NCBI RefSeq assembly: GCF_023055435.1
Contig: NW_025963779.1
Span: 70,556,001-70,620,000, forward strand
Direction: 5' to 3'
Source of the DNA: Haliotis rufescens
Taxonomy: Eukaryota
DNA length: 64,000 nucleotides
Positions 1-27,800 of this stretch are shown here, piece by piece. Position numbers and translations under genes: made by a program. Under the pieces are notes generated by a model. The model searched no databases. It had not been told where the DNA came from and saw only the letters and a program-made list of their open reading frames with translations. Positions within the stretch are counted from its first letter, which is position 1. Each line of letters starts with the position of its first letter.

Positions 1-279
1 TCCTCTAAGTTATTATCCCGTAACTTCAAATTCAATGTTATCTTTGAAAATATGTCAGCATTTCAGAGATTCATGTTTACCATGTGCTGTCATGGTATGG
101 TTTTTGCCATGCTTCGTGCCCGGAAATATGTATATCCAGCAGATCGTCAATATATCTCTATCATGGCAGAACTTTCTTAAAAGAAAACAAACAGTGATCT
201 TTAATCTAAACTGTTTTATAATTAAGTACTTTTAATAGGCAATGGTAACAGTACAAATTACTTTCGAAAATTCGTGCAG

Positions 280-665
280 CTGCAGCCCCAGCCTTTGGTG
301 TCTACATTCCACAACTTTTGAGGTACAATCCAGCATGCTCTTTCTCCCAAGATATCAAAAGGCGTCATTCAATTCTTGCTCAGAAGTTGTTTGATAACAA
401 TTCATGGCCTCGGGAAGGCTTGTAGGGGACATACCAAATTCGACGCATCAGTGAAAAAAAAAATGTCCGATGCTATTCCCTAATTAGACCATTTGTTACC
501 GTGTTTTTACAGGTGTCTTGACTTGCTTTTGCATGTGTTTGTATCGGGTGGCACCGGTGGGACAGGATACGCTCACTTTTTCGCGCACACAAGGTATCAT
601 AACAATTTCATAGTGATTCATAAACACATGCTCAAGATGTAGTCGTAGTCGTACAATCGACTATG
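280..665 (+). mobile_element. Penelope-like (Naiad-type) retroelement 3' fragment
   Basis: Encodes PAFGVYIPQLLRYNPACS...RHSILAQKL (RT C-terminus), followed by the shared 3' region gacgcatcagtga...caggtg...caggatacgc. Confidence 0.65.
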
Positions 666-671
666 AACTAT

Positions 672-793
672 GGGGGCACGGGGGCACGGGTGATTCGCTG
701 TGCAGAGTTGCGTCCCTTAGCACGTCAGAAACCTATGATTGTGGGTTCGAATCCCGTACCCGTTCCCGGAGTGGTAAACGTCTGAGACCTGCA
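672..793 (+). mobile_element. SINE family D fragment
   Basis: ggggcacgggtg...attcgctgtgcagagttgcgtccc...gggttcgaatccc...gtggtaaacgtctgagacctgc. Confidence 0.75.
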
Positions 794-1155
794 TTATACT
801 TTCATAAGAAAGTAATGTCGAAAGCCACCATCTTCAACAGAGTCAGAATTTGAGATATCTGCAATGGGTATTGAGCGTCGGCATCAAAAAGCCGTTGGTG
901 ATATTAACAAATAACTGAAATGGAAGGTGTCATCCAAAATGACTGAGAAAGCTGCGATGTACATGTATAAGAAAGACCCATGTAGGCCAGCGAGATATGT
1001 ATAAATTAGGAACCGAGCAACATCTTTAGGAATAGTTTTAACAGTTATCAATTAATTATCACCATGGTGTATTCTGTGTTAGTGATGATCAAAGCAAGGC
1101 GCAAGCGCAAAACGAGTTTGACTGTTGACTGTATTTGCTTTACGACTGTACACAC

Positions 1156-2357
1156 CATCATCCGACCAGGTATATGCAATGTTCATCTTCATGGTCTGAA
1201 ACATGGCCCCGGGGTGGTCGTTCAACTGCTTGATACTGGTCCTGTAGGCGTAGCGACCACCAGGCTTCAGAGGAATAACCTGGCCCGGACCTGCATCCCA
1301 AGTCTTTCTAAGAAAATAGCAGAATGAAAAATACTGAAATAATCTGACACTTCATTAAAACTTTACTTCAACTGGAACAATAACATTTATGGGTAATATA
1401 GAAAAAAACACTCGGGTAAGGATCGCATAAGGGGCATAGTTATGTAGGTATACATGTACTGTTCCACTTTTGATAGGGACAATCAGATATGTCATATATT
1501 TAAATGTACACATGATATATGAGAAACATTTTGTGTTAGGAAATATCTCTATCAAAGGTGGAGAAGTGTATTTCGATATTAAATCAACTAAACTGCTTAA
1601 TAGGCAAGGGTGATAGTAATCTTGTATAAATTGTGATACAGTGGTTCATGGTTGACATTCATGTGGATGGATTAGTTACATATGAAGCTGGTCGAATTCA
1701 TAACAAAGTAGTTAAAAAACCTCTTGTTGGCCTTTGAAAACATCGGGTTTTCATTTGCGCGCCAAGGACTCAGGTAGTTAAATTTGTAGATTTATCACTG
1801 AGTGAGGAAAGTATTCAGTTCAAGGTGTCATTTTGACGGACCTTTAACGTCGGCTGCGACGTCAATGGTGTCAAGGTCACAGAGTCAGTTAGTTTTAGAC
1901 TCTGATGGTGGCCATACGAGATGACCTTCATCTTGAAAATCTACTGTTTCATATGTGCCATATGGAACCTGGGTCATTGACAATGATGTGTGCCAATTTA
2001 GGACAATCGATTACCATCCAGCATCTGTTGATTACTTATAAAACATATACAATTTACAGCTGAAAGCAGTTTGACATTATGAGGTTACTGTCAAACGTGA
2101 AGCACATTTCAGGTGTGATATCGCTAATTGCTAAAAGCGGCATAAACCCATACACACTGATCTACCTACCTGCCAGTAACTTTCAGGGCACGGCTGCCCC
2201 CATGGACGTCGTCTGTGATTATGTCGAGGTTGATTCCAGATCCTCCCCAGTTGTCAGAGAGGTCCAGACTCTCAAATCCTGGGTTTTTCAATAATTCGAG
2301 TGCAAACACCGATTTTATTACTACTATCAGCAGAACAAGGTAGTCACGGGGACTCAT
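1156..2357 (-). CDS. GH10 xylanase-like glycoside hydrolase paralog A, first two coding exons (signal peptide + start of CBM4/22-like module); gene continues off the left edge
   Basis: Exon 1 2170-2357 encodes MSPRDYLVLLIVVIKSVFALELLKNPGFES...VHGGSRALKVTGR. Exon 2 1156-1307 encodes KTWDAGPGQVIPLKPGGRYAY...IAYTWSDD. Both have GT-AG boundaries, with the same phases and the same 152-bp exon 2 length as the paralog at 6121-20906. Confidence 0.88.
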
Positions 2358-6120: not shown

Positions 6121-9100
6121 CTAACCGATGATAGCCCCACCATGACCATCAAGTGAACAACACGTGGCCACGGCCAACACCCCTTGTTCGCCAGTAAACT
6201 TATCTTCACCATTCATGGCAATGCAGAATTCTCCCTTAGCCTGCGTCCCTAGAAAACAGATGAACAGACAGGGCTAGGATGTATGGAATACCTAAACATA
6301 ACAGATTGGTCATGTTTAATTAGCAGTTGTATGAAGAGATACTCATTCTGTGTTTTCAATGTGGAGCTATGTTATGTGTAGATGCAAACACAGAATGTGG
6401 AAGCAAACGCCATGTGTAAGCTTCCAATGTTAAATCTAGTGCAGTTAATTCTACAGGTACACTAGCTATTCATTGAAAACATAGTATGATTTATATTTCC
6501 ATTCTACCCGAACAAAATACAACGCCAAAGCCTTTGGTTGTTAGGATGATAGTGAGTGAAGTAGCATAGGTTGATACTAGTGTTTTGATGGGGTTGCCGA
6601 ATTAAAGGAATCGCAGCCATTAAAACGTTACTGTGTGCGATAGTGAAGCGTCAGTTTCAGTTATATCTCTAAAACGTGAAATATACTCTATAGGTTAACT
6701 TGCGCACTGCCACAATAATTTAAGCATTCGAGGAACTCGGCATTTTGTAATCTATATTTTCTGGCATCAAAGACGGAAGTGAAATCAACTTCTTCAATAA
6801 GAGATTATTGTAATTTGAAAACTCTCGTTGACAATTCAGAATCGAGGTTTATTTTAAAAGTCTAGGTCAAATAAAACGTACGTGTGGTTTTTCTTTAATG
6901 CATATGTTATTGTTCATGATAATGACATAGAAATTTGTGTTTCTGTACTTTCAGGATTTGATGCATATTTAAACCCGCGGTATCCAGGGCGATGAATCTT
7001 CATGGCTTTATAAGGAGAATAAATGGGTATATAAATGCTTCTCACTAGGATGATTCATATGAGTAGCATGAATTATATTATATGATATCCAATTTTCTAA
7101 AAGAAAACAAATACCTCCAATAAATGCGCCCGCTGACTTTCCAAAGTCGGCTCGGACGCTACAGCCAAACAGCACAGTTCCCGCATCACAGGCTACAGAT
7201 GCCTTCTCTCCCTTCTGGAGACTGCTCGGTGTGGACACCAGCGTCTTACAGGACAGTTTGGGGGCAGCACAACAGGCAGCATAAGACCAGGTACCTTCAT
7301 TTCAAGTTATATCTTTAGCTAGATTTTGCTATATTGTGGTTGGATACAAGTCTTGCATTGATGTCTACCATAAAACGTGAGTGCATTAAACCGGTACCAT
7401 TTAATAAAAATCATAGTAATATCCTGATTATGCAATTTGAAAGGATGCTCGTAAAACACTTTCAGATATGTTCAGGGTTTTGTTTCTTAAATCAGACATT
7501 TCAGATAACATTGTTTCTTTTAAAGGACATTAAAGTAACTTAAAGTTTCAACGTTACAGTAACTGGTTCGATAATATCACACTGACCTACAGTAGTGCCT
7601 TCATTTGAGGCAACACATCCCTTTTGATTGTCCGATGGGAAGGATCCTATCATCTCAGAGTCCCATGTCCAGGCCGTACAGCCTAAACGAGAGAGAGTAA
7701 TCACATCAATGCTGTTAATAGATAATATACCATTGACAATTTACATAACAAATTCAGTCGAACCCCCTTGTCACGAACTCATGGTGACGGGAAACATAGT
7801 TCGACTTATCCGGAGTTCGAAACATTCGATTCAACCTTATTTGACTCAGTTGGGTCAATGTGTAACCTCGCCTTCTCGCGTCTCCACACAACGAGTAAGG
7901 ACGTCTAAATGAACATAATCCAATGATGCTAATACACGCCGTAGTTACAACAGATTAACGACAATACTCATCATTCTCACTTAATTCAGTGGGCGATTCA
8001 AATACGAATCTGTCTTTCCTTTAACTTAAACGTCAAGCATTTTACACTGTGGGGATTCTAGGGTATAACAGATCTCACGTACCTCGTGTAAGTTGTAAAT
8101 ATTAGGTGGTCACAGGTGCACCATGAGAGCAGTGTTGTGTTATCTCTGCCATTATAAGATGTAATCTGCAAATACAGTGCTGGCTGCTGTGCCCTTTCTT
8201 TGACTAACTCAAGAAAGACTGTCAACTCACCTGTGGCAATTTCGGAGTTCAAACAAGTTGTTTCCACTCTCGCATCCACAGACTTGGCAGATGGTCCTGA
8301 TCCTCTGTAGGTACACTTGATGTTCTTCGTCTTACAGCATCGTGCAACAGCCTGGAGACCTGTATACGATTAGATATTTATGAAGGATTGGTCGGACAGG
8401 TTTTCTTCAAAACATTCAGTCGCTTTAGGTAAACAACCAAACCTTTCCTACTCATTTGCAGTATTATTTTATTTGCACAAAGTCTTGGATTAATCATGAT
8501 ACTATTGTAAATAAAAGCGACAAACCCTGAGCGTTTTCCATAATAATTATATTGATTGGTTAAATTAGCAGATGGCCCTGGACTTCTGTAGATGCACTTT
8601 AATTACTTGGTCCTACAACATCGGCAACAGCTAGAAGACCTGATATGTTGAGGTGGATTATAAGTCACGCAACTTAAATATATATCCATCTCTGGGTCGT
8701 TTCCAAACTTGTACTTAGGATATTAAATGAAATTGACCATTTTATTGCCACAGGACCACAGCTACTCTGAATTAGACCTTCGCCCGCGGTTTTGAAAGCA
8801 AAGCTGTCTAAGGGGTAATTTCTACAATCGTCATGATGTCAAAGATATTCCTAAGTATTTTTCGATTGTGTCTTTTTATTTTATTACAAGATAAATGCGA
8901 AAGATCTGAACAAATTGAGTGTCCATAATTTATTTGAAAAGGGTATGGTATAAACTCATTCATAGTGCAGAGAAGTTGATTATATTGGTATTGCTTAAAG
9001 GAACTGTTCCTTTTCTTCATACCATCGATTCCTTTAAGTCAGCCCAATACGTCAGTTGCTATCCGTATAACCATGTCAGAAAGAGTTCACAAGTATTAAT

Positions 9101-12100
9101 TTAAATTAAAAAAAGAATTGTATTATAAGCATGCGTTTATGAATAACGATCAAATAATGATGACACCCGGTGTTCGCGAAAAGATGACCGTTTCCTGAAC
9201 TACCGTTGGCACTCGTCACAAATACATCCAATTTCAATTCGAAAATAGCTTCTTTTTGAAACCTTTACTGTAGTCTTGAATGTTGTAACCCTGATCAAAG
9301 AACTTTTGAGCAAGTCATGTGGCGTTCTTTGAATATTATGCTCACCTTCTTTTGATCGCCAACCATTTACCGCTTTACAAGCCACCCGACCATTTTTAAC
9401 CTCAATTTCCTCGCCATCACGATACCACTCTCCATCCTGAAGAAAACCTGATATTATTCTTGAGAAGAAAACCGGTTAACAGTTTTCAATTTCAATTTTG
9501 TGTTGATGTTTGAATTATCCAAATATCTATAACAACGAGTACACTACATGTAAACATGAAACACTTAGTAAAATATTCTGCTACCTTTTCCAGAACAGAG
9601 AACTGATATACATCAAGTCAACTGTCTGTGAAAAAACATATTGTGATTAAATATTTTGAGTTTCTTTTATATTTTTTTTGGTTACCGGTCCGCCGGTCCT
9701 AAATTTTAGAAAACGAAGAAAACAAATACAACACCAGTTTGAATTAGTTGCTCTTTTTTATCATTTAAATGAAGAACAATATTGTTTTCAAAGAAACGTC
9801 TAAATACAAAAGTTGTTAATATAACTTGTCAATGCAAGAGAATAACCAGCCTAGATCTTCTGCCTAAACATATTCCACTTGGCGTGAAGGGCAAATAGCT
9901 GTGGAAATTAAATGAATGGACCACTGATGACCAGTGATGACACCAGGTGTTCGCGAAAAGTGCAAGCCTCTCCTGCCCTAAGCTATCTGCAGAATAGTCC
10001 TATTAATTATACTCAGACACACATACTAATAGTTTTATGAAGAAAATCTAAAAATATATAATTAGAAGAGTTGATTTTGAAACAAACCAACCTTGAATTT
10101 TGTATATCACACCGTACAAGCCAAACGTGGGCAGAAAGGCTGAATTTTATCTGGACTTAGAAGACCACCTTTGTGAAACTAAAGTGCAGGAAAAGGGGCT
10201 GGCAAACCAAGCATCACATTCAGAGAAAATATCGTCGGCATAATTAGAAAACAACAACATTCAATCCATCAATCGTACATATTTGAGGAGTTGGGTTTAA
10301 TGCTGCTTGGATCAGTGGTTTAATTATATCAAGGCCTAAACATATTGATAATAAGTACCTGATGATAACCTGAACAGCCGGTCATCACTTCATCACTCTC
10401 GCAGTAAGCATAAGTAGGCTTGTCATCGCCGACGTCAGAGACTGCGGACCAGCGGGTTACGCACTGAATGTCGGTATTATTAGCATCTGATGACATGTGA
10501 CCAACAATATGCTGGTTGTTATGGGAGACTTGGATAGCATGTGTCACGTGCACGAATGGATCAATAGTTGTTGGGAGTGTCACTTGATCTGAAAAGTTAA
10601 GGAATAAATTTATTACTTTCGTTTGTTTGTGTTCTAACGACTAATTCATCAATAGTCCAGATATATGACAACGATCACCCCAAACATTTTTACTTCGTTT
10701 GGCATTAGTTTTGGATTTATGAAAGTAATTTCAAGAAAAAAATTCGGACTCTTGATGCCCGTCCTCTGGGGACTAAAGAAATTGAAATTGCACGAGCTTT
10801 AAAAAATGACGAAAGTTTGCCTTGAATGAAAATAAGAGTTTATCAACCCCTTCACATAACATCTTCCTTAAAAGAAAATGTCCATGCATTATGTCACCAA
10901 AATAATTATATTGCAATCATGACATATAGGACTTGTCAATACATTGTGAATTTATACACCCAAATGTAGCAATAGTCTCTTACGGCCATCGCCACTGATG
11001 TCCAGGTTGAGTGTGGCATCTGCCTTCCCCAGGTGGAATTCCTGGTACATAACGGGCTTCCCCTTGTAGTTGACTACAATGTCATAGTCTCCCTGGAAGC
11101 CATTCACGGAGAAGGACGATCCATCTGAGAGATTCTTAGCTACATGTGTTGACCACTCCTTCTGGACCAGATCAAAGTAACGTTGACCAGCAGCGTTCAC
11201 CTGTACACATATACAACTTTATTTCAATGTGAATCTCCTTTCCGTCCAGTGTCAATTTTATGAGTGAGTGAGCTGGGTTTGACGCCGTTTTGTTATGAAG
11301 TATTTCAACAACGAAATTATAATTTGGTTTTATGAATTTAAGTTGTGTTTAGATCGTTTTTGGAAATAGTCCAAGTTCGTTGGTCTTCCTTCCCCATGAC
11401 GAGCGAACACGTTAACTGCTTGGCTTACCCGACAGCCGTTATGGTTTTCACTTGGTACAATGTGTGAGTGACCGGCTGCTTTGTTGTCTTATCTGCATTG
11501 GGTGGGGTGGGGGTGAGGGTGGTGGGGGGCGGTCGTCAGATACTTTATCAGTGTGTATCTTATTTATCCTTTGCCTTTGGCCCTGTTTCATTGTTTGTAT
11601 AATGAGTGAGTGAGTGAGTGAATATGGTTTTACGCCGCTTTTAGCAATATTCCAGCAATATCACGGCGGGGGACACCAGAAATGGGCTTCACACATTGTA
11701 CCCATGTCGGGATTCGAACCCGGGTCTTCTGCGTGACGAGCGAACGCTTTAACCACTAGGCTACCCGACCGCCCTGTTTGTATAATGACATATTAATGTA
11801 AGCTAATTTTCTTAAGTTTGGTCAATCAAAAATTGTTTCATAATATTTTAACATTATATTATAAGAGCTCATAACTGTTCATTGGCAATGGAGTGGTGGG
11901 GTAGCATAGTGGTTAAAGCGTTCGCTCGTCACGTCGTAGGCCCGGGCTCAATTCCCCACATGGGTACAATGTGTGAAGGCCATTTCTGGTGTCCCCCGCC
12001 GTGATATTGCTGGAATAGAAGCGAGGTAAACCATACTCATTCAGTCATTAGCAACGTTAAAAAAGCCTTTACATGAAAATGTAAGAATGTGATTCGTGCC

Positions 12101-15100
12101 CTGTTGCTCTTAGTGTTTCAGTACCTCTCATCGTCTTACTATACCTTGGTGCTGCCATAGTTGGCGGAGGTCGTGGCAGGCATGACAAGTTTATAAACTT
12201 ATAAAATTATAGGTTGAGGTCATGGCAGTATAAGTAACGCCACGGGATGTACTGGAGCTCACGCCTCACGTAGTGTTAAGCCACGTAGGATGAACTAAAC
12301 TTTGATATCTATTCCGAACCATTTGGTCATGATGTGTATATTTCGGCCCATTTGCTTATGATTTTGTAGTTACTCCATTGCGTCACGATGTGTACCTAGC
12401 TAAGCCTCAGTGTACTGTGTAATACTTCTTGTAGTGGTAAGTAACTATATGCAACTATATCTGATCTAATCTAGTTCATGCAATCAACCATTGTCTGTAT
12501 TATGGGCCTATGGCCTTCTTAATGAATAAACTGTCTGTCTGTATATGTAATCTAATATTTGCCTCAGTATCTAGACAATCAGTTATTGTAATAAAGTACT
12601 GTGCTCAGTTGTTATACTATTTAAGAATATTATAAAAGCTCTTGTTAATTAATCTTACAAAGAAGTTATATCCATTGATGAGTGCGGCGTAAGGGCTTTT
12701 CATTTGATGATCCCAGAATCCCCAGAATATGACGCCCTCCACTGCTGTATGACTGAAGTAGGTTCTGAGAGCCCAGTCGTACCAGTCCGCCCGGATATTC
12801 TCGTCATGGTGCACCAGGTCCATCTCGGTAATCCACAGAGGCAGTCCAACAGATCCCAGGTTGTCCAAACGTCTCTGAAATATAATGTTGCCCATAGTTT
12901 TATATCAGTACTTCAACCGTCAACTAGTATTTCTGCAGTAACATAAAGAGCAACATCAGGGTGATTGCTCAATCTCATTACTATGTACTGGTTTGTGTAC
13001 ATACAGCTTTTGATCGCATAACAGCATTTCCTTTCAGTAGCGGTCCTTGTGAAAGGTGGAAGTTATGTTTGCCATTAGACTGTTGAATGGGACTGACTAT
13101 TGACAATTAATTAAACATAAGGGAGGGAAGGCCTACTTTCAGAAGTGTGGGATCTGGAGGTGTGTAGTCTCTGAAGTGACTCTGAAGACCCAGGCCTCCC
13201 AGTCCAACATTAGCCTTTTTGAACTCTTTAGCCTGGGCAACGTAAGCCTGGAAATAAATATAACATATATAAGCAACAGCAAAATAAAACGTTAAATTCT
13301 CCAACTGCAGATTGTTGGTCGGCCAATTTTGTTGAGAATGGCGATAGTTGGTATTGCACGACTATATGGTAGATACTGAATATTTGCGTATTGGTGTTGT
13401 GGTTGTGGTGATTATTATGTGACATAAATCGCATAAATGATGTTCTGTGAACTGGTACATAGCAGGCCACCATCATAATGTGAAGTCTACGAAATGTATT
13501 ATCAACATACATCAGTGACGGCTCCAACAGCAACAACGTCGTAGTCATTGAGGAAGAGCTTGGGCACGGGATCAGCCTTGTGGACCATATCGTAGATCTT
13601 CTCCGAGTACAGGGCATCACCTGTTTTCTCTTCATATAACTGACCATGGAGAAGTTCGTTGTTCACGTCCCAGTGACCCAGTCTAACGCAAAATTTAAGA
13701 CATATACTTTCAAATATATTGTTTGAATCTTCTATGTTTGTCCATTTATCAAATATGAATAAACATGTGAGTATAATTGGAATTGTGTGTTGATTGTAAA
13801 TTACTATTTTACCATGACCATTCTAAACATGTCCATGGCGATAGATACAGTTCACTTACTGTCCCTTTGTGATGCCGGTCATATATTTGACTCTTTCTGC
13901 AATGGCTGCTTTCAACATTGTCCCGTTTAAGGCTTCTACCCAACTGGGAGAGTTACCTGGAACTCCCCAGAACATATTGTGTCCTCGAACTTTCATGCTG
14001 TAATATATGAACTGTTATAAATGTCCTAAAGAAATTATGTAATGCATTTGAATAATGGTGAAATAACAGTTTTATTTGTAGTTTTGAATTCCGTTAAATG
14101 CATCCAAAGTTAGTCTACATTGTAAGATACGTACCCATGTTGATTAAGCACCTTCACAGCATCTGTAGCAACTGTGTAGTCAGGTTTATCCTGCAAAGGA
14201 TGTTTGACAACAGTCATGTGTTTTTAGATATTTAGTCACATTGTGTTTTGCATTAATATTGTTTTTTTATGGAAGTTCTCCTTCTGGGAATTACTTTGCG
14301 TATTGTAAAATTTATAATTGCAAAAGTTTCGATTTTCCTTGATGAACACACAAATGAAGATATGAACAGTATATACCTTGGTACCTCTGTTGTACTTCCA
14401 CTTGAAGGATCCTGCTGTCACCCAGTTGAACATTGTATAGACGAAGTTTTGATACTCTTTGTAGCCGTCGTTTATCATATATTCCTCATTTATTACTGAC
14501 CCAAATCCAAACAGATGTCTTTTGTGGTCAATCTGTAAATCAGAGAAATTGACTTGTCTTAAAGTACGTATGTCACCACAGAAATTCATGGTCTCGGGAA
14601 TGTACAACTGAATTTTTCTCTTGTGGAATACAGTAAACTACGGTTATAACGAACTCAAAAGGACCACTAATTTTAGTTCGTTGTAGCCGTAGCTCGTTAT
14701 ATGTATATATACAGCATAACTACAACAAATAGTCGGGACAAAAACGTAAGTTCGTTATATCCGTCAGTTCGTTATAAGCGTGTTCGTTATAAACGTAGTT
14801 TACTGTATCTCATGCGCTTACGACCATAACAAGAGTCTCATAGGTACATACAAAGAAGCTGTATATTTATATTAAAAACATATGAAGTCCAAGTGTATTC
14901 TGCAGGGATGTCATTTCCTTTATCCATCATGAACAGAATTATAATATCTAACCTTAACTTCAATATCAGCAGGGTTGAATGAAGATGAATGTGTCACTCT
15001 GTAAAACACAATGATCCATATGTATTATAGACACATCATCGTTCATGGCACTAACGTGAAATAGAAGTTCTGAGAGAAATGTGTTATATTGAAGTGAGTA

Positions 15101-18100
15101 TGTATAGTTTTGGGCCGCTTTTTATCAATATTCGAGCAATATCACGGCGGGGGACGCCAGATATGGGCTTCACACATTCCACCCATGTTGTGAATCGAAC
15201 CCGAGTCTTCGGCGTGACGAGCGAACGCTTTAACCACTAGGCTACCCGACCGCCCTGTTATATTGTAACACACCGTATCAATTAAAGTCGTGTCTTAACA
15301 TACACACCATGTCAAAAATACTAATAGGATGCTGCCACTTGATTAGTCGTTACGTTTTGGAAAATATATATATTTCATATTTTTCTAACAACTGTCACTT
15401 CGTGAAAACACATCTTTTGCTTCAGGCCACTTGGTGAAATTGGCCTATTTATTTGGCAGTATGTATGTGATGAGTCTTGAGATTGTTGCAATTGTTTTAC
15501 ATTATACAGTTGTTCCGTTAAGAGAAGGAACCATTAATAGAGAACTGACATTTAAGTTTACCGTTTGGTAGAATTACCTTCAAAAGTCACACGACGTGCC
15601 TCCATGACTAAGGCGTTTTTCTTCGTTATAATGCGTTATCAAGTAAAATATACATTCAGTGAACAGGGTATGACAAAAGACCTATTACATGGATTATTAC
15701 AAACGTCCCGCCTGGTTCGTGTATGTCCGGAGCGAAACGTAGTACACATATAATAATTCATAAGCAATAGATGATAGAACGAAGGCAGCCCTACTGAACA
15801 TTGATGTTATTTTTCCTAATCTTCTGTATCCTCGCATCTGCCTCGGCCTTCCAGCTCATGTCCTCGTCCACCGTCTGGAGAGAAGCGTCGTCAACGATGA
15901 AGTCGATTCCTGGATCTGGGCCTTGGAAGTACAGGTTGGCCTTGCTGGTGTCTGGTGGTGTATGTGTAAATATACATATTCATGTACATGTAAACATCAA
16001 AATGGATAGCTTTACAAATGGTAAGATCTATGCATAAAGATTCAGAGTGACAAAACGCTCTCCACAAGACTGTATGACAAACAGGATGACTTCAACTTTC
16101 CAATGGTCAATAGTCCTTCCTTGCCTTTGGTGTCTATATTTCACAACTTTGTAGGTACAATCAAGCATGCTCTTTCTTCCAAGATTTCAAATAGCGTCAT
16201 ACAACTCTTGCTTGGAAGTTGTTTTATCAAGGTGACAACATTCCAGGCCTCAGTAAAGCTTTTCAAATTGTTTGTGGAGGATGTTTCTAAATTTGACGCA
16301 TCAGTGACAAAGATTATGTCGATGCAATTCCCTATTTTGACTTGTACCATATGTTCCCGTGTTTTTTTCAGGTGAACAATTGACTTGCCTTTGCATGTGG
16401 GTCAGGATACGCACACCTGGTATCATCACTGTTTGAAAGTGATTCATAAACTCATGCTCGTGATATAGTCGGATTCGTACAATGGACTCTGTTTTTTTGC
16501 AGAGATTTGTCGCTTATATTTATTCTTATAACAGTAACAGCACAAAATTAACTCAACCCTTTTTCAGAATGGACAGTTGTAGTTCCTTGTCTTCTCAACA
16601 TGAAATGAAGTAGTGTGAACAACCCTACACGGTTAATCCCACAAGGAGCATTTAGTTAAGCCTCTTCGACAAAGTGAAACCATTCATCGTATGAGATATT
16701 TCAAGTACCGTTTCAATACGTATATCTATATGCAAAAAACGGCACATCCCTTGAACTTACTGGATACATAATGTTCTGTCATAGTAGATATGTTGACATT
16801 GAAGAGGAGGGTAAATTTATTCGATGACGCTTATTATTTGTCGACATTTGCAACCGACAACATTTTCAGTGATCTCATAAAATCTCATTACAGTTTGATA
16901 GCGATCAAAATACGATAAAAACCAATCAAGAATGGTTTGATTAACCTGAAAATATGGAACTAGACACCAGATGATTCAGTCAGTACTGGACCTTATGTAT
17001 AGTGACTAAATACATTATTGCAGCCTCACCACCATACTGGTACCTCAAGAACGACCTCACACAATTGTACCCCTGTAGGCATTCAAAGAGGGCTCTTAGG
17101 TATGACGTGCTCATGTATAAACCACTAGGCTTCCCAACAGCCCCAACAATGAATAATGAATGTCACTGTTGAATACTTGAATTGACTGGGCTTACTTCTT
17201 AATGGAGCGGTGAAATCCCCGTCGAGGGTGAACCATCCATTGGCAGACTGGACAAATGGATGTTGAGCGATGTCGTAATAATCTGTTTTACCTGTGTATG
17301 ACAAAATTCATCATTGGGCTAGGAATGTCAGTATCGTGTCTCATAAAATCGTTCATATTTACAGAGTATAAATCATGTTTTTCGTAAAAATTCACAAAAT
17401 CCTTGTGATTTTCACTGAACCATAATATAATTGTCTTTCCCCATTCCTCCCGCCACCGCCCCTCTTTGTTTACTCTTTTCCCCTACCTACCCTACATTTT
17501 GAAGAAATTCCGCAAACTATTTGAAACTAGAATATTATTTTCGAAGTTTTTCAACCCACCGACCTGAATTTTAGGGCAAAACATTCGTAATCAAAAATAA
17601 GAAGAAAATGTCATCAGGATGAGTGATCGCAGCTTTGGATAGTATCTCATGTCATATCAAGGCATGTCAGCTTGATGTTGGAGGAAGCCCTAAGCCATGC
17701 CGATCTTTGACGTTTACTACTTTGGTGAAACCTTCCAGCACAGGTATGGTGCTGACGAACCCAGGAATATAATCAGGGCGAATCCGGCATTGGAGCCCAA
17801 GATGATATGTTTCCGGTATGGCTAAGAGGAACCAACTCTGCACAGCTAATTGCGGTACCTTAGACAAATGAGACACTCGTGTTAAAACAGTGAGAACAGA
17901 GACAGTTAAATCTTATTACAGTACACACCGTCATCAGCCCATGTATATGCAATGGTGATCTTGATGGTCTGGAACAACGTCCCTGTGTGATCATTCAGCT
18001 GTTTAACACTGGAAGTATAGGCATAGCGGCCACCAGGCTGTATGGGAACATCCTGCCCAGGGCCTTGGTAGGACTGTGTTCTGAAACGAAAATTACCAAT

Positions 18101-20906
18101 TTGCTATATGCTTTATATATGTGTGTTGATGTCGATGTTACACAACGATCCCAGCAGACATTACTTGCATATTTATGATCTTGAAAACTATTATAACTAT
18201 TTCGTACATAACAAGATAGTTTGGTTAACATTGCAGAACGTATGTACTATACTATACTGAACAGAACCACATCGACATACATGTACATCAAGCTGTGACC
18301 AGTTTAGGTAATTCCACTTCTAGAACAGCATGAAACAACTGGTGTAGTTTTCTATCAATACGATATACCACCAGATTATTAAATTAATGAAACCAACATC
18401 TATTAACTGATCATCTGTCCATATGTTTGTTAATGTAATGCTTATGCAGTGCCATGAAGAATCAGTTGAGAGTCCAGATCCTGTGTATCTTTACGTGGCT
18501 TTCGTTGGTATATTATACTTTTCATATTTTATCTTTGCGTTTTAAAACAATACACTGGTTCAGAGTCTTCAACATGAAAAGAGATTTTCATAATATTGAT
18601 ATGGTGACTTCAAACAATGATCACATTTCAGCACAACTGATTTGATTATTGATTTCATTGTGAACCATTTTAAGGCGGAAATAGAAAAGGGTACCTTTTC
18701 ACCTTTTTGTCTTTGCATATTAACATTTCTTTATGTACAGGTATATACATATACGCTTCATGGGGAACCGATATCGGCTCTCTGCATACCATGCATATCG
18801 AAATAATAATTAAAGCAACGAAATCCTTTCCATTTCCAATAGAAATGCCTGCTTAAAGCAGAGATTCCGACTATATCATGAACATGACGGTGTTTATGAA
18901 TGACTATCAAATAGTGATGATACACTGGTAGCACCCGTCACAAACACATGCAAAGGCAAGTCAATTGTTCACCTGCATAAACACGGGAACATATGGTACA
19001 AGTCAACATAGGTAATTGCATTGAACATCCTTTTTTGTCACTGATGCGTCAAATTTGAAAATGCGACCTACATGTCTACTATAAAACTTTTGTAACCTTG
19101 ATCAAACAACTGTTGAGCAAGAGATGTATGACGCTCTTTGTAATCTTGGTAGAAAAAGCATGTTCGATTGTATCTCAAACGTTGTGCAATGTAAACACCA
19201 AAGGCTGGAGCTGCTGTGATTTGGCTCGACATGAAGGGAACTTTTACTATTGGAAAGTTGAAGTCATCCCACTTGTCATGCAGTCTTCTTGTGCAGAGTG
19301 TTTTGCATCTCTGAATGTTTATTCATAGATCTAGATATGAAACATAACGTCTCTCAATAAGCAGATTGACAAAACAATATATTTCACGAACTTGCCATTC
19401 TTACTGATAAATTTACATGGCAAGGGTTTTGTCGTTTTTATTAACTATAAATATCTCTAATCTACGTAAAAATGGACGACATAGTTCAAATGTCGCCACA
19501 TTTATTCCACATATCAATTTTTTCCATTCCAGAAACTGAACCTTATGATAACAAAATCAAGACTATCTAGCCTTGACATATATGGCTATTGCCTTCCCCT
19601 TTCAAAATCATATACATTACATATTTAACTATGATATATGTCATAAGACTTTTTAATGTAAATTATCAGCAACCAGTGACCATACAATGTATTGTGGTAA
19701 TTTTGCTACACCGTGCCCGCTGTATATGTTGCGCTGTAATTGCGTAAATCACTACAAGCAAATGTTGTGCAACACAATGTTTGTTTTGAGGGATAGGGTG
19801 GGATAGGGTCCGGATTCCCTATTTGGAAATGTTGAAGTTGCAGTGAACATTTAAATTCTGGGATGAAAATTATCAAACATGTTTAAATGTATGACAACGA
19901 GCTTTTCTTTCTTACGCCCACTTGCAAGTTTTGGACAGCTAGCATGCTGAACTATATAACAATGTTTGATAGGCATTACTTACAAGTTGACGGATGACAA
20001 AGTGGAGATAACTTATGGATAACAAGGCTTGACGGTATAAGGATTTATACCAAAACGTCGCCTTTAAGTAAATAAAGAAGTTGTTATCCATACATTATCT
20101 CTACTTTATATAACAATGGCTAATATTAGTGAACTAAAAGAGAAAATAAGGTGCCGGTCATTCACCCAAGATGCGTGTTTTACTCCATTACGGTACAGTC
20201 ATTATCTACATCTGCTATGAATATCAGCTTCAAGAGTTGTTCCTATATCAACCTCTTAACACAGCCTTTTTGACACCTTTCAGTCTTACCTAATGAAGTC
20301 CTAAACATGAATGGGTGGAAATGAGCTAACTTTAGTTTCACAATGATTTGGACATTTTTTCATCATTTCTGAACTAAAGCATATCCCGTGGATCAATCAG
20401 GTTCCCTCTCATGTCCCTTGTCCTTTCTCAACATGAAATGAAATTGTGTGACCAATCCTGCTCGGGTAACCCACAAGGGACATTCAATGAAGCCTCTTCC
20501 CAAAAGTATTCATATAGTTATCCCCTTCAGAGAAGACTTCAAGGACTACTGGTAATTATTGCAGATATGGACATTAAAACAGGACATTTGGACCACTCTC
20601 AAATCGTATGGTTATAATATGTATTATATCCCATTAATTTGATCTTTAATACGTGTATGTATGTGATGAGATACACATATCATGTGACGTCCAGATAAAA
20701 CAGATTTCTTCTGTGTTAATTTACCTTCCGGATACTTTGACAGCATGAGTTCCTCCATGGACGTCATCAGTGATACTAACAAGTGTGAAGCCCCATCCTC
20801 CCCAGTTGCCCGACAGATCTGGACTCTCGAATCCTGGGTTTTTCAGCAACTCGAGTCCAAATGAACTCTGGACAATAAGTAGAGCTAGGACACTGCCTCG
20901 AACCAT
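6121..20906 (-). CDS. Secreted GH10 glycoside hydrolase (endo-xylanase/EGX-like), about 850 aa: signal peptide - CBM4/22-like - GH10 - beta-rich linker - three PCSK9-C-terminal-like Cys-rich modules
   Basis: 18 phase-consistent GT-AG exons: 20725-20906, 17929-18080, 17196-17291, 15795-15951, 14953-14998, 14377-14532, 14135-14190, 13860-13997, 13511-13682, 13137-13247, 12659-12874, 10984-11200, 10359-10588, 9346-9436, 8231-8359, 7587-7682, 7115-7294, 6121-6248. They total 2553 nt, open to TAG. GH10 motifs: VRGHNMFW, WDVNNE (acid/base), LFLNDY, GLGLQSHF, LWITEMD (nucleophile), VIFWGFWD. Confidence 0.93.
8568..8642 (-). pseudogene. Decayed duplicate (pseudo-exon) of the 5' half of GH10 exon 15
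   Basis: cagatggccctggacttctgtagatgcacttt...catcggcaacagctagaagacctg aligns to exon 15 at 8288-8361 (cagatggtcctgatcctctgtaggtacacttg...catcgtgcaacagcctggagacctg). The acceptor AG is kept but a 1-nt deletion shifts the frame. Confidence 0.7.
11603..11774 (-). mobile_element. tRNA-derived SINE family A
   Basis: A box (TAGCCTAGTGG), B box (GGTTCGA.TCC), (ACTC)n tail; TSD tgtttgtataatga. Confidence 0.9.
11890..12047 (+). mobile_element. SINE family A
   Basis: Same consensus, inverted relative to 11603-11774; TSD-like tcatt(g/a)gcaa. Confidence 0.85.
14631..14805. mobile_element. MITE (Tc1/pogo-type, TA target site)
   Basis: TA|CAGTAAACTACGGTTATAACGAAC ... GTTCGTTATAAACGTAGTTTACTG|TA terminal inverted repeats; internal GTTCGTTATA repeats. 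Confidence 0.85.
15093..15255 (-). mobile_element. SINE family A
   Basis: Same consensus; TSD tgttatattg. Confidence 0.88.
16050..16490 (+). mobile_element. Penelope-like (Naiad-type) 3' fragment
   Basis: TRLYDKQDDFNFPMVN...AFGVYISQLCRYNQACS RT C-terminal signature plus the shared 3' UTR. Confidence 0.72.
18865..19310 (-). mobile_element. Penelope-like (Naiad-type) 3' fragment
   Basis: Reverse-complement homolog of 16050-16490 (DDFNFPIV, AFGVYIAQRLRYNRTC). Confidence 0.7.
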
Positions 20907-24878: not shown

Positions 24879-27800
24879 TCAGCAGTTGACTTCTTCGTAG
24901 TCGGAACTACCTGAACAGTGCCGAACTTCTCGGCGATTACCATCCCTCGTGACCCGACTACAGGGCATCTCATATCCATCTGCGATGACTGAATAGTACG
25001 GTTCCTCCCGATCACACGGTTCCAAGTGTATTCCTGGTCGATAGTGAACCACTGGTTGATCAACAGGACTCAGATAACTTGCTTGGTTCTCATTACACGC
25101 GCAAGACTTCCTGAAAAAGTATGGATTACAAACGTATATCATGTCTATTAAGTTAAACGTCAAAGGACAAACGTAGCTGCAACAATGCATGACTCTATTA
25201 CCTTATACGCCACGTGGACTAAAGTACACTACACGTCGGTAGTGATGGCTTCATATTCTTGCCTGTGACACCTTTTGACTTTTTGTTCAGTTTGCTAAAT
25301 ATGCGCCGGTAATCCTACGTGTGAACAAGTCAAATATGTATATTTAGGTACCTTTTGAAGAAAGAAATAGATCCAGATACGATGACGATCGCGAAAATAG
25401 CACAAACAAATAGAAGTGCAGTAACATGCCTGCTAGAATGGACCTTTTCTGTAACAGAAAAAAAGAAGTACGAAATCGCATTGTTGTTAAACAAACACAA
25501 GTCAATGTGACTGATACTGTTATGGCTGCTTGCCGTGCTTAGATTACATAGGTGCTGTTACAAGTCTCACTATGAACTTTAAGTTTAAGTCGGAATCGTT
25601 CAATGAATAATGGTTTCTCATGATTATAAGAATTCTTTAGTGGCTCTAAGTTTAAGAACTCTCCCACTTGATTCATTTTGACTATTTTCTGTCTAAATGA
25701 GACAATTAGTCGTGTCGGGGATTCAACTTAATAGCATTATATGTACATCTAAATCATGTTATGTTATAAATGTCGTGAAGGAGTGGCCGATTTCCGTGAT
25801 TCATACATGGAATTTTATTTGAAACCAGTGCCGTCAGTAAACACGTTATCGGTAGTATGTGGTGTTTGTACCTGTGCACGAATCCCCTTTCCATCCGCTC
25901 CTACAGGACATGCAAACTCCGCTCTCCTTGTGACATACTCTACAGTTACCAGGACACGGAACAGAGCAGTCATCCATGTACACTCCCTCCTCGCAACCCA
26001 CTGTGCAGCTACCGTTCTTATCACACAGTGTCCCCAAACATCCTTGGCTGCAGTTCCTTACACACTCTGGGCCGTACAAACCCCGGTCACATTCAATACA
26101 CACTCCTGTGGATCTGTAACACCTTTGACAGCCTCGAGGACACGAGTGTTCACAGTAGGACCCCCATCTCCCCTCCAAGCAATCAGTGATGCAAGTAATA
26201 CTATCTGTATTCACATCTAACTTGTGACACATTTGTTGAGGACAGTCTGCACTGCAATTGTTCTCACAATGTCTTCCAAATGTGTTAAGTGTGCATCCCT
26301 GTGCACAGAGGGCACTTGTCTGCTCACATATTTTACCACGACATCCCGGAGAACACGTTGCATTACAATGAGCACCATAGTAGCCTGCTTCGCATCCATT
26401 GGTACAAACCCCAGTCAGTTTGTCACAGTCACGTCTACAGTTCTGACACCTACCTTCACAAAACAAACCAAAGTATTTATTTGTACACAGGCATGCACCA
26501 CCGAAATCACACTTGTTCTGTGAACACCCTTCACTGCAAAACTGACGACAACGAGTCCCGTACCTGCCATTCCGGCAAGCGGTACACGTGCCGGTGTCCT
26601 GGTGACAAGCAGTGCAGTTCCTCTGTGGACATTCATCAATGCACCTGTCTCCCATGTGGCCATCCAGACAGGGTGTGCAGGCTCCAGTGAGCACATGACA
26701 ACGTTTGTTTAAACAATGCTCTGAACATTTGTGGACACAAGTAGGGCCGTAATATCCGACTTTGCATCCTCCACTGCAGTTTCCACCGCTTTGATGACAT
26801 TGATTGTTTTTACAATTCGTTGGACATCTTTTCGAACAATTAGGACCGTAGTACCCAACCTTGCATCCGCCCTTGCACCTTCCACCATGCTGATGACAGC
26901 GGTTGTGTTGACATCCATGGCTACAATGATCTCGGCAAAATCCACCAGAAAAACCTGCCTCGCACCCGGAGGAACACCTTCCGTCGCGATCGTTACATTT
27001 CCCAAGCAGACACATGGCGCCACAGCTGTTCTCACACTGTTGCCCCCAAGTTTTCGACGCACAGGTACGCACGCATTGGTTACCTATGCTCTGGATGCGC
27101 GCACATTTCTCACAGTAACATTGGCTGTCACGGACACATTGCTTATCACATCGTTCACCGTGAAGTCCATTCTCACACCTCTCTCGACGACATGCGTAGA
27201 TGCACGTTTCAAGGCTCTCTGTAAGGTTAGGATACTGGGTTAGGTGCTAATTACTGTATTTTGAAATGAAACTTATCCCTTAATCACATCAGTAAACAAA
27301 TATTACCGTATTTCCTCCATTAGACTCCTAGACGTATATTAATTTCGCGCAAGCCGTTGACCCTGCGTGTATCAGAGGCCCGGCGTCTATTCTGTTTTAT
27401 GCTGGCTCAGTGACTCACTACCTTACCAAATCCCAAATTAAGCAGTCATCTAAAGGGTACATTTGCGGGAAATAGTCATTCATTTGTTAATCACCAGCAT
27501 TTCACACCCTTCGAGACCCGGCGTCTAATAGAGGCCCGGCTTCTATTTTTTGGACAGAACATATGACCCTGCGTCTATTCGAGGCCGGCGTGTGTTGGAG
27601 GTTCGGCGTCTAATAGAGGAAGTAGGTATTTAACGTCGTCACAAGAGGTGAATATGAAAGTGTGTCACTTTAGTTGTATGGAAGAATTATTGCTCAGTTT
27701 GTTCTATAAATCTACTCACATCACGTACAGTACTTGCCAAAAGTAATGGATTTGGTTTGGTTTGTTGTTAAACTCCGCACTCAGCAATATTCGAGCTACA

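What the first reader, a model, noticed from the sequence alone, without database searches (positions are those of the whole stretch)
6121..10470. GH10 glycosidase fused to a complete PCSK9-like C-terminal Cys-rich (resistin-like) triple module
Seen in sequence: exons 13-18, mostly fragmented or out of frame in the ORF track, splice in frame to give IQCVTRWSAVS...CESDEVMTGCS...RDGEEIEVKNGRVACKAVN...GLQAVARCC / KCTY...TCLNSEIATGCTAW...GCVASN...YAACC / AAPKLSCKT...ASVACDAGTVLFGCS...FCIAMN...GVLAVATCC. That is three modules of six Cys each, every one ending in CC. Established knowledge: the vertebrate PCSK9 C-terminal domain has three such 6-Cys beta modules (recalled motifs CRTVWS, RGER...LVCRAHN, GVYAIARCC, ASCCHAPGLECK, VACEEGWTLTGCS, AVAICC), which match position by position. 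Inference: a domain best known for directing LDL-receptor degradation is here appended to a polysaccharide-degrading enzyme. It could be an unrecognised carbohydrate- or mucus-binding module, or an uptake/sorting signal in digestive cells, and it bears on the origin of the PCSK9 tail.
Basis: partly seen in the sequence, partly recalled or inferred. Interest (0 to 1): 0.9.

Follow-up and report, generated by a model that had tools for sequence, protein, structure and literature searches.

The report
Abalone xylanase with PCSK9-like tail
A red-abalone digestive xylanase gene ends in a three-part cysteine-rich domain that is a true relative of the tail of human PCSK9. This shows that the PCSK9 tail is an old, movable protein module, although nobody yet knows what it does on a sugar-cutting enzyme.

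Summary
Six GT-AG exons on the minus strand (10588..6121) encode three 6-Cys modules, each ending in CC.

They are exons 13-18 of one 18-exon gene (20906..6121). Every exon translates to an exact piece of RefSeq XP_046337941.2, named 'endo-1,4-beta-xylanase 3-like' from Haliotis rufescens. Its domain order is CBM4_9, GH10, a small beta domain, then the tail.

Evidence that the tail is homologous to the PCSK9 C-terminal domain:
- Sequence: one stretch, E 1.5e-19.
- Pfam: PCSK9_C1 and PCSK9_C3 score above gathering.
- Structure: a predicted model of a homologue superposes on the complete PCSK9 domain (Z 27.6, rmsd 2.1 A, 214 of 222 residues).

The fusion is old and conserved. It occurs in chitons, gastropods, bivalves and a brachiopod, and all 18 Cys are invariant. 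In this genome all 8 strong tail copies lie 3-6 kb downstream of a GH10 exon.

The same module also occurs on Sushi-repeat genes in abalone, alone or with Kringle in hemichordates, and on subtilases in amphioxus and vertebrates. Intron positions shared between the two abalone gene types point to a shuffled six-exon cassette.

Function is untested. I favour a non-catalytic docking module. Public annotation already shows the architecture, but I found no paper discussing it. The scan had noted GH10 genes elsewhere in this genome, but not this tail.

The parts
20725..20906 (-). Exon 1. ATG at 20906, a hydrophobic signal-peptide-like N-terminus, and the start of CBM4_9. The RefSeq model starts 31 codons further upstream.
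   Evidence: ORF. Exact substring of P0175. The H. cracherodii orthologue P0176 starts at this Met.
15795..18080 (-). Exons 2-4 (18080..17929, 17291..17196, 15951..15795): the rest of CBM4_9 and the linker.
   Evidence: Junction peptides and exon translations are exact substrings of P0175. Pfam CBM_4_9 scores 68 bits on P0175 residues 50-188.
12659..14998 (-). Exons 5-11 (14998..14953, 14532..14377, 14190..14135, 13997..13860, 13682..13511, 13247..13137, 12874..12659): the GH10 catalytic barrel. The acid/base Glu lies in the motif WDVNNE (exon 9). The nucleophile Glu lies in ITEMD (exon 11).
   Evidence: Pfam Glyco_hydro_10 scores 127.8 bits. Best PDB match is GH10 XynA 7d88, E 2e-71.
10984..11200 (-). 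Exon 12: the small beta-sandwich domain that ends the tail-less GH10 relatives. Its donor GTAAGA is in phase 1. If left unspliced, the frame stops 10 codons later, at 10952.
   Evidence: Tail-less homologues end 0-13 residues after this point.
10589..10983 (-). Intron 12, only 395 nt, joining the xylanase part to the tail.
   Evidence: The junction peptide SGDGHQVTL is present in P0175.
10359..10588 (-). Exon 13: a His-rich hinge (7 His in about 40 residues) and the first half of module 1 (Cys 1-3).
   Evidence: Pfam PCSK9_C1 partial hit, E 1.1e-3, on the exon alone. Exact substring of P0175 from residue 599.
9346..9436 (-). Exon 14: the middle of module 1 (Cys 4).
8231..8359 (-). Exon 15: the end of module 1 (CC) and the start of module 2 (Cys 1-2).
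7587..7682 (-). Exon 16: the middle of module 2 (Cys 3-4), including a conserved aromatic strand (TAWTW here).
7115..7294 (-). Exon 17: the end of module 2 (CC) and the first half of module 3 (Cys 1-3).
   Evidence: The exon alone matches the PCSK9 C-terminal domain 7anq_A at E 3.6e-8, aligned to PCSK9 residues 597-644. Pfam PCSK9_C3 partial hit.
6121..6248 (-). Exon 18: the end of module 3 (Cys 4, CC), a short C-terminal extension, and the stop TAG at 6123..6121. An AATAAA lies 49 nt downstream.

Best explanation
The region is the 3' end (exons 13-18) of one 18-exon red-abalone gene, 20906..6121 on the minus strand. It corresponds to RefSeq XP_046337941.2.

The gene encodes a secreted modular endo-beta-1,4-xylanase. 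From the N-terminus it has a signal peptide, CBM4_9, a GH10 catalytic barrel with both catalytic Glu intact, a small beta domain, a hinge, and a disulfide-locked triple module. That module is homologous, as a whole unit, to the C-terminal Cys-rich domain of PCSK9.

The tail was added to the old C-terminus of a GH10 gene through a phase-1 intron, as a six-exon cassette. This happened early in lophotrochozoan evolution. The tail has since been kept under purifying selection about as strong as that on the catalytic domain.

The steps above are shown. The next step is inferred. The tail does not take part in catalysis. It acts as a rigid, pseudo-threefold binding or targeting module that docks the enzyme to a partner other than its xylan substrate. 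I think the most likely partner is a host cell-surface or matrix (glyco)protein of the gut or digestive gland, by analogy with what the domain does in PCSK9 (about 40%). Direct glycan binding comes next (about 30%).
For: One gene:
- Every exon translation and every junction peptide is an exact substring, in order, of P0175.
- Intron 12 is 395 nt and phase-matched, and exon 13 has no start codon or signal peptide.
- Homologues from Haliotis, Aplysia, Lymnaea, Biomphalaria, Pomacea, Littorina, Patella, Mactra, Mya, the chiton Liolophura and the brachiopod Lingula carry CBM_4_9 + GH10 + PCSK9_C1 + PCSK9_C3 and align collinearly with the window.
- Three assembled contigs of 2.55-2.65 kb hold full 841-846-aa reading frames, so they are most likely spliced mRNAs.
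- In the window's own genome all 8 strong copies of exon 17 lie 3.3-6 kb downstream, on the same strand, of a GH10 exon. Fourteen further GH10 exon copies have no tail.

Homology to PCSK9:
- P0175 residues 637-871 match human PCSK9 residues 454-680 at E 1.5e-19.
- Pfam PCSK9_C1 scores 65.9 bits (cut-off 31.3) and PCSK9_C3 scores 36.6 bits (cut-off 26.7).
- The AF2 model of homologue P0009 has pLDDT 91 and pTM 0.82. Its tail matches 7anq_A at Z 27.6, rmsd 2.1 A, 214 of 222 residues, 30% identity.
- The ESM Atlas model of P0175 itself matches the PCSK9 cluster at TM 0.82.

Unit homology: modules group by position across GH10 tails, PCSK9, amphioxus and hemichordate proteins.

Selection: all 18 Cys are invariant in 32 proteins. 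Column conservation is 0.56-0.59 in the tail against 0.60 in GH10.

Cassette: four of five introns sit at identical positions and phases in the abalone PAN-Sushi-tail gene. The fifth has the same phase.

Docking rather than CBM:
- The enzyme already has a CBM.
- Elsewhere the module sits on Sushi, PAN, Kringle and protease proteins, or stands alone. GH10 was the only CAZyme family among the 45 hits.
- No CBM or lectin fold appears among its structural neighbours.
Against: I have no RNA or protein evidence from this species.

Nothing here tests the function. Several points fit a glycan-binding role as well as my preferred one:
- A pseudo-threefold C-terminal module on a GH10 recalls the GH10-CBM13 xylanases.
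- Module 2 has a conserved aromatic strand.
- The Atlas lists bacterial look-alike folds on hydrolases and adhesin-like proteins (an untested lead).

The His-rich module 2, thought to matter for PCSK9's pH-dependent behaviour, is absent. Pfam PCSK9_C2 does not recognise module 2.

A single origin of the fusion is not proven. Lingula and one chiton copy are unresolved in the GH10 tree, and four tail-less proteins nest inside the tailed clade (quick tree only).
Confidence: 0.8

Rival explanations
1. The tail is a new kind of carbohydrate-binding module. Its three equivalent faces would bind xylan, another algal wall polymer or mucin glycans multivalently, raising the enzyme's concentration on its substrate.
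For: C-terminal beta-sandwich modules on GH10 enzymes are usually CBMs; GH10-CBM13 xylanases such as 1isv appear. Module 2 has a conserved alternating aromatic strand. The high pTM of 0.82 suggests the tail is packed in a fixed way against the enzyme. The Atlas shows similar predicted folds attached to bacterial hydrolases and adhesin-like proteins (lead only).
Against: No structural neighbour is a CBM or lectin. After PCSK9 (Z 28) the next match scores only Z 5.4. GH10 was the only CAZyme family carrying the module among the hits. Its other partners are Sushi, PAN, Kringle and protease domains. The enzyme already carries CBM4_9. The only member that has been studied binds proteins (PMC9113161).
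Confidence: 0.3
2. The tail has no ligand. It would be a disulfide-rich stabilising or oligomerising cap that protects the enzyme in protease-rich digestive fluid.
For: There are nine predicted disulfides in about 235 residues. The model is compact and confident. The domain sits at the extreme C-terminus.
Against: Non-Cys surface motifs are also conserved over several hundred million years (consensus). Tail-less paralogues work in the same fluid without it (PMC6573481). The module persists on unrelated proteins and as free-standing secreted proteins, which suggests a function of its own.
Confidence: 0.15
3. Exons 13-18 are a separate gene, or the fusion is an artefact of gene prediction.
For: If intron 12 is retained, the frame stops 10 codons after exon 12, so a short isoform is possible. 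An AATAAA lies in intron 12 at 10614.
Against: Intron 12 is only 395 nt and exon 13 has no Met or signal peptide. The same fusion appears in more than 40 proteins from four classes, including full-length frames on 2.5-kb contigs. The genomic pairing is 8 of 8.
Confidence: 0.03

Closest known systems
C-terminal Cys/His-rich domain (CHRD, modules M1-M3) of vertebrate PCSK9
   Same: Both have three tandem 6-Cys modules of about 70-76 residues with a CC-x6-C spacing. They are collinear over the whole domain at 30% identity and have the same pseudo-threefold 3D arrangement (Z 27.6, rmsd 2.1 A). Pfam PCSK9_C1 and C3 score above gathering.
   Different: The abalone tail is attached to a xylanase, not a subtilase. 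Module 2 is not His-rich (0 His in the window) and is not recognised by PCSK9_C2. Instead the hinge before module 1 is His-rich in abalone and bivalves. Nothing indicates any link to LDL-receptor biology.
Tail-less molluscan GH10 'cellulases/xylanases' (EGX type of apple snails)
   Same: They share the signal peptide, CBM4_9, GH10 and small beta domain, and they are intron-rich endogenous genes. The described ones are digestive-gland specific (PMC6573481).
   Different: They stop exactly where exon 12 of this gene ends. The characterised enzymes are 230-597 aa. I found no characterisation of the tailed subfamily of about 840 aa.
Bacterial GH10-CBM13 xylanases (e.g. Streptomyces olivaceoviridis FXYN, PDB 1isv)
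   Same: Both have a GH10 barrel followed by a C-terminal, internally threefold-repeated, disulfide-containing beta module (one search lists 1isv among the GH10 matches).
   Different: CBM13 is a beta-trefoil lectin fold. The abalone tail did not match trefoils or any other CBM. This is an analogy of layout only.
Hemichordate 'PCSK9-like' free-standing triple-module proteins, Kringle-PCSK9_C proteins, and abalone PAN-Sushi-PCSK9_C genes
   Same: They carry the same triple module. Modules group by position in the tree. The abalone Sushi genes share the six-exon structure of the tail.
   Different: The N-terminal partners differ, or there is none.
Resistin / RELM-beta head domain
   Same: Both are small disulfide-rich beta modules that form a threefold head (PMC9113161).
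   Different: The match is only weak (Z 3.7-3.9). Resistin is a true trimer of single chains with a coiled coil, not three modules in one chain.

Membership tests
PCSK9 C-terminal domain (Pfam PCSK9_C1/C2/C3) | Three tandem modules, each with six Cys and ending in CC | tested here: met
   Read directly from exons 13-18. A regex finds three modules in P0175 with the same lengths and CC-x6-C spacing as in PCSK9 proteins.
PCSK9 C-terminal domain (Pfam PCSK9_C1/C2/C3) | Profile match above Pfam gathering score for modules 1 and 3 | tested here: met
   On P0175, whose exons are identical to the window's: PCSK9_C1 scores 65.9 bits against a cut-off of 31.3, and PCSK9_C3 scores 36.6 against 26.7. Single exons score below the cut-off, as expected for pieces.
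PCSK9 C-terminal domain (Pfam PCSK9_C1/C2/C3) | Profile match of module 2 to PCSK9_C2 | tested here: not met
   PCSK9_C2 gives no hit on P0175. Module 2 is still aligned in the 3D superposition. It groups with module 2 of the amphioxus and hemichordate proteins, while vertebrate module 2 forms a long separate branch.
PCSK9 C-terminal domain (Pfam PCSK9_C1/C2/C3) | Pseudo-threefold arrangement of the three modules in 3D | tested here: met
   Model of homologue P0009 against 7anq_A: Z 27.6, rmsd 2.1 A, 214 of 222 residues. The Atlas model of P0175 itself matches the PCSK9 cluster at TM 0.82 over 227 residues.
PCSK9 C-terminal domain (Pfam PCSK9_C1/C2/C3) | Histidine-rich module 2 ('Cys-His-rich domain'; 9 of 14 His in M2 according to PMC9113161) | tested here: not met
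   Mean His fraction is 1.2% in module 2 of 32 GH10 tails, and there is no His in the window's module 2.
PCSK9 proper (the proprotein convertase) | Subtilase (Peptidase_S8) catalytic domain upstream of the tail | tested here: not met
   The upstream domains are CBM_4_9 and GH10. The two S8 matches in the genome lie elsewhere. This gene is not a PCSK9 orthologue.
Glycoside hydrolase family 10 | Profile match and (beta/alpha)8 fold | tested here: met
   Pfam Glyco_hydro_10 scores 127.8 bits. PDB 7d88 matches at E 2e-71. The homologue model matches 7d88 at Z 46.
Glycoside hydrolase family 10 | Two catalytic glutamates (acid/base after Asn; nucleophile in a T-E-x-D motif) | tested here: met
   WDVNNE in exon 9 and ITEMD in exon 11. 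Both Glu columns are at least 90% conserved in 32 tailed homologues.
Glycoside hydrolase family 10 | Xylanase activity | not testable with these tools
   This needs an enzyme assay.
Carbohydrate-binding module (for the tail) | Fold or sequence relation to a known CBM or lectin, or shown glycan binding | tested here: inconclusive
   No CBM or lectin appears among the structural neighbours of a tail-only model. Binding itself cannot be tested here.
Resistin / RELM | Single head module with an N-terminal coiled coil, assembling as a trimer | tested here: not met
   Here three modules sit in one chain with no coiled coil. Z is only 3.7-3.9 to 1rgx and 1rh7.

The most novel reading that the evidence does not exclude
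The PCSK9 tail is not a vertebrate invention. It is an ancient bilaterian, exon-shuffled extracellular targeting cassette, possibly with bacterial structural forerunners. Its original job would be to hand cargo to a conserved cell-surface partner for uptake and endo-lysosomal routing. In molluscs, which digest partly inside cells, it would route a xylanase (and its bound food particle) into digestive cells. That would give a simple invertebrate system for identifying the long-sought partner of the PCSK9 tail.
Probability: 0.12. Interest if true: 0.85.

Novelty: new variant of a known kind. Interest (0 to 1): 0.55.

Why it matters
How the C-terminal domain of PCSK9 sends the LDL receptor to lysosomes is still debated (PMC9113161). 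That domain is usually discussed as a vertebrate feature related only to resistin.

This gene shows the same triple module on a digestive enzyme. It has been conserved across molluscs and a brachiopod, with all 18 Cys fixed. In the same genome the module also sits on Sushi-repeat proteins, with the same intron layout. That makes the module an old, mobile building block and gives many natural versions to compare.

For carbohydrate-enzyme research, it is an accessory module that I found described for no glycoside hydrolase. It also marks a whole subfamily of animal GH10 enzymes that appears uncharacterised.

The value is limited in two ways. The architecture can already be seen in public automatic annotation, and nothing yet shows what the tail binds.

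Tried and rejected

Joined model: I did not build or search a joined spliced protein. Exons were searched by reference one at a time. Whole-protein tests used the public protein P0175, after I showed exon by exon and junction by junction that it equals the window's exons.

Weak or blank results:
- Exon 13 alone gave no PDB hit.
- Single exons score below Pfam gathering.
- Foldseek on the full-length model listed only GH10 structures in its top 50. The PCSK9 match appeared with the exhaustive aligner.
- An exon-wise scan of the genome with PCSK9_C1 found nothing, because introns split the domain.

Matches I rejected:
- Sushi-repeat proteins among the exon 17 hits (P0021, P0024, P0030, P0031, P0034, P0041). 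I take these as cross-matches of Cys-rich repeats, not tail homologues.
- A Closterium protein with 10 short stretches (P0002). I did not follow it up, and it is probably of the same nature.

Bacterial look-alikes reported by the ESM Atlas could not be fetched or tested. Pfam at E up to 10 showed no link to a bacterial family.

The careful GH10 tree did not finish, so only the quick tree is reported.

The N runs at 24003-24141, 24417-24569 and 40475-40684 lie outside the gene and were left alone. I met no human-like contig.

Full report
**What is in the sequence.**

I set the exon limits from splice sites and reading phase:

| Exon | Coordinates |
|---|---|
| 13 | 10588..10359 |
| 14 | 9436..9346 |
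| 15 | 8359..8231 |
| 16 | 7682..7587 |
| 17 | 7294..7115 |
| 18 | 6248..6121 |

The stop codon TAG is at 6123..6121. All six exons have AG acceptors and GT donors. Only the acceptor of exon 17 is poor in pyrimidines. The product is a His-rich hinge followed by three modules of six Cys, each ending in CC.

**It is one gene with the xylanase.** Upstream on the same strand lie twelve more exons. They start at ATG 20906 with a signal-peptide-like N-terminus.

- Exon 12 (11200..10984) ends at a GTAAGA donor in phase 1. Exon 13 starts in phase 1, only 395 nt further on.
- Exon 13 has no start codon and no signal peptide of its own.
- Taken one at a time, the in-frame translation of each of the 18 exons is an exact substring, in order, of public protein P0175. 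Every junction peptide is also found in it. P0175 is XP_046337941.2, 'endo-1,4-beta-xylanase 3-like', from Haliotis rufescens.
- The 18 exons add up to 2553 nt, which is 850 codons plus the stop.
- The window's contig is 94,228,061 bases long, the same length as the contig that carries the H. rufescens proteins. The window is therefore red abalone.

Exons were searched by reference, and whole-protein tests used P0175 by its id.

**Domain content of the gene.** On P0175, Pfam finds four families, all above gathering:

| Family | Bits | Cut-off |
|---|---|---|
| CBM_4_9 | 68 | 25.9 |
| Glyco_hydro_10 | 127.8 | 22.1 |
| PCSK9_C1 | 65.9 | 31.3 |
| PCSK9_C3 | 36.6 | 26.7 |

Both catalytic glutamates of GH10 are present, in the motifs WDVNNE and ITEMD. 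PCSK9_C2 does not hit.

**Homology of the tail to PCSK9.**
- Exon 17 alone matches the PCSK9 C-terminal domain at E 3.6e-8, aligned to the junction of modules 2 and 3.
- The tail of P0175 (residues 637-871) matches human PCSK9 residues 454-680 in one stretch, at E 1.5e-19.
- The tail of homologue P0009 matches Xenopus PCSK9 at E 1e-12 in a database of 5.8 billion proteins, with 32% identity over 93% of the tail.
- I folded P0009 with an alignment of 32 tailed homologues. The model has mean pLDDT 91.1 and pTM 0.82.
- Foldseek on the whole model showed only GH10 structures.
- An exhaustive alignment against 48,161 PDB representatives placed the complete PCSK9 C-terminal domain (7anq_A) at Z 27.6, rmsd 2.1 A, with 214 of 222 residues aligned and 30% identity. 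Model residues 613-841 align to PCSK9 residues 452-680.
- The ESM Atlas model of P0175 itself matches the PCSK9 cluster at TM 0.82.
- A tail-only relative, the free-standing Saccoglossus protein P0025, gave a model with pLDDT 90.4. It has PCSK9 as its only strong PDB neighbour (Z 28.1).
- Its next neighbours are an apicomplexan perforin beta domain (Z 5.4), adiponectin (4.1), resistin (3.9) and RELM-beta (3.7). No CBM or lectin appears.

**How widespread the fusion is.**
- A search of 1.84 billion representative proteins with exon 17 gave 45 hits.
- The full-length hits from Haliotis, Aplysia, Pomacea, Babylonia, Elysia, the chiton Liolophura and the brachiopod Lingula all carry GH10 plus PCSK9_C (the Elysia model lacks the CBM).
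- A second search with P0009 added the bivalves Mactra and Mya and many more gastropods. It also found a second subfamily of about 560 aa without the tail.
- The tail-less proteins end 0-13 residues after the point that corresponds to the exon 12/13 junction.
- Three contigs of 2554-2652 nt carry complete frames of 841-846 aa. Because the gene has 18 exons, I infer that these are spliced transcripts.
- All 18 Cys of the tail are invariant in 32 proteins. The tail modules are about as conserved as the catalytic domain: 0.56-0.59 against 0.60 mean column conservation.
- In a quick GH10-domain tree, 25 of 27 tailed proteins form one clade (support 99). Four tail-less proteins nest inside it; these are losses or partial models. 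Lingula and one chiton copy are unresolved. A single early fusion is therefore likely but not shown.

**The tail in this genome.**
- Exon 17 has 8 strong copies. Each lies 3.3-6 kb downstream, on the same strand, of a GH10 exon. Fourteen more GH10 exon copies on other contigs have no tail.
- The gene just downstream of the finding starts in the window at 2357 on the minus strand. It is a tandem paralogue, identical to XP_046337947.2, and it also has the tail.
- A 97%-identical copy 48 Mb away equals XP_046331187.2.

**The module is mobile.** PCSK9_C triple modules also occur in these contexts:

| Context | Organisms |
|---|---|
| Downstream of a subtilase | amphioxus and vertebrates |
| Free-standing secreted multigene family | hemichordates |
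| With Kringle domains | the hemichordate Glandiceps |
| Behind PAN and Sushi repeats | abalone itself, at three loci on the same chromosome |

In a tree of single modules, module 1 of GH10 tails groups with module 1 of PCSK9, amphioxus and hemichordate proteins (support 99/97). Module 2 behaves likewise, except for the long vertebrate branch. The triplication therefore came before the fusions, and the unit moved as a whole.

The GH10 tail and the Sushi-tail gene at 74.75 Mb both encode the unit in six exons. Four of the five introns sit at identical positions and phases. The fifth has the same phase in a loop that contains an indel. Both cassettes are entered in phase 1. This is the signature of exon shuffling.

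**Differences from PCSK9.** There is no subtilase domain, so this is not a PCSK9 orthologue. Module 2 has no His in the window and 1.2% on average in 32 tails, whereas 9 of the 14 His of the human domain are in module 2 (PMC9113161). Instead the hinge before module 1 is His-rich in abalone and bivalves, with up to 9 His in 42 residues. It is not His-rich in caenogastropods or Lingula.

**How it probably works.**
- Shown: this is an intact, secreted-type modular GH10 enzyme with a conserved, rigid C-terminal PCSK9-type domain.
- Inferred: the tail is a non-catalytic binding module.

I favour docking to a host protein or glycoprotein (about 40%), for four reasons:
- The enzyme already has a CBM.
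- The module's other partners are protein-recognition domains.
- Among CAZymes in the hit list, it was seen only on GH10.
- No CBM or lectin fold resembles it, and the one studied member binds proteins.

A new glycan-binding module is a serious rival (about 30%). The layout resembles GH10-CBM13 xylanases, module 2 has a conserved aromatic strand, and the Atlas points to similar predicted folds on bacterial hydrolases and adhesin-like proteins (the last is an untested lead). A purely stabilising role is less likely (about 15%).

**Novelty.**
- RefSeq already models the fusion. Pfam hits are precomputed, and NCBI names one split fragment 'PCSK9-like'.
- A search of about 8.4 million papers found none that links PCSK9 to a xylanase or GH10, and none that uses the Pfam names in this sense.
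- The main survey of molluscan glycoside hydrolases does not mention the tail (PMC7560691).
- The apple-snail genome paper describes only GH10 proteins of 230-597 aa (PMC6573481).
- A major PCSK9 review does not discuss invertebrates (PMC9113161).
- I therefore class this as a new variant of known kinds: real and conserved, visible in databases, and apparently undescribed.

**Limits.** The structure tests used a homologue's model and the Atlas model, not an experimental structure. Function is inference only.

Noticed in passing
window 1..2357 (minus strand), continuing to G000:C1:70545183-70556000: A tandem paralogue starts at ATG 2357 with a signal peptide and CBM4_9. Its exons are identical to XP_046337947.2 (P0056). 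It carries its own PCSK9-like tail about 10 kb beyond the window start; its exon 17 is 75% identical to the window's.
   Followed up: yes
G000:C1:22036001-22056000 (L012, L013): A third gene of the same subtype lies 48 Mb away on the same chromosome. Its tail exon is 97% identical, and it equals XP_046331187.2 (P0055). It is either a recent dispersed duplicate or the product of gene conversion.
   Followed up: partly
G000:C1:61755620-61800837 and G000:C412:2194405-2198038: A cluster of four more tailed GH10 genes, plus one on another contig. They belong to a second subtype, with exon 17 41-47% identical to the window's. They probably correspond to the 839-840-aa RefSeq proteins.
   Followed up: partly
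G000:C1:74746880-74766879 (L010+L015); C1:60911001-60931000 (L019+L020); C1:92622001-92646000 (L016-L018): Three genes combine PAN and/or several Sushi repeats with a PCSK9-like triple module. One has at least eight tandem Sushi exons. The gene at 74.75 Mb shares the six-exon layout of the GH10 tail.
   Followed up: partly
window 11633..11792, 11882..12044, 15079..15294: The same short reading-frame pattern recurs on both strands inside introns of the xylanase gene (for example the peptide run VVKAFARHAEDPGS). It looks like an interspersed repeat of SINE or MITE type.
   Followed up: no
ESM Atlas neighbours of P0175 residues 630-881: Predicted structures from Actinomycetota, Chloroflexota and Myxococcota reach TM 0.77-0.83 over about 235 residues of the tail. 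Some are free-standing proteins of about 275-300 aa. Others are attached to an alpha/beta hydrolase or to adhesin-like 'choice-of-anchor A' proteins. The sequences could not be fetched, so it is open whether this is homology or convergence.
   Followed up: partly
window 25846..27072 (minus strand): A long open frame of 408 aa made of EGF/laminin-type Cys repeats. It belongs to the neighbouring receptor-like genes already noted by the scan (s1-816413).
   Followed up: no
GH10 tree: Amphioxus GH10 proteins and bacterial or metagenomic CBM4_9-GH10 proteins group together (support 98) inside the spread of molluscan sequences. This bears on the old question of whether animal GH10 genes came from bacteria. 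It rests on a quick tree with a midpoint root.
   Followed up: no
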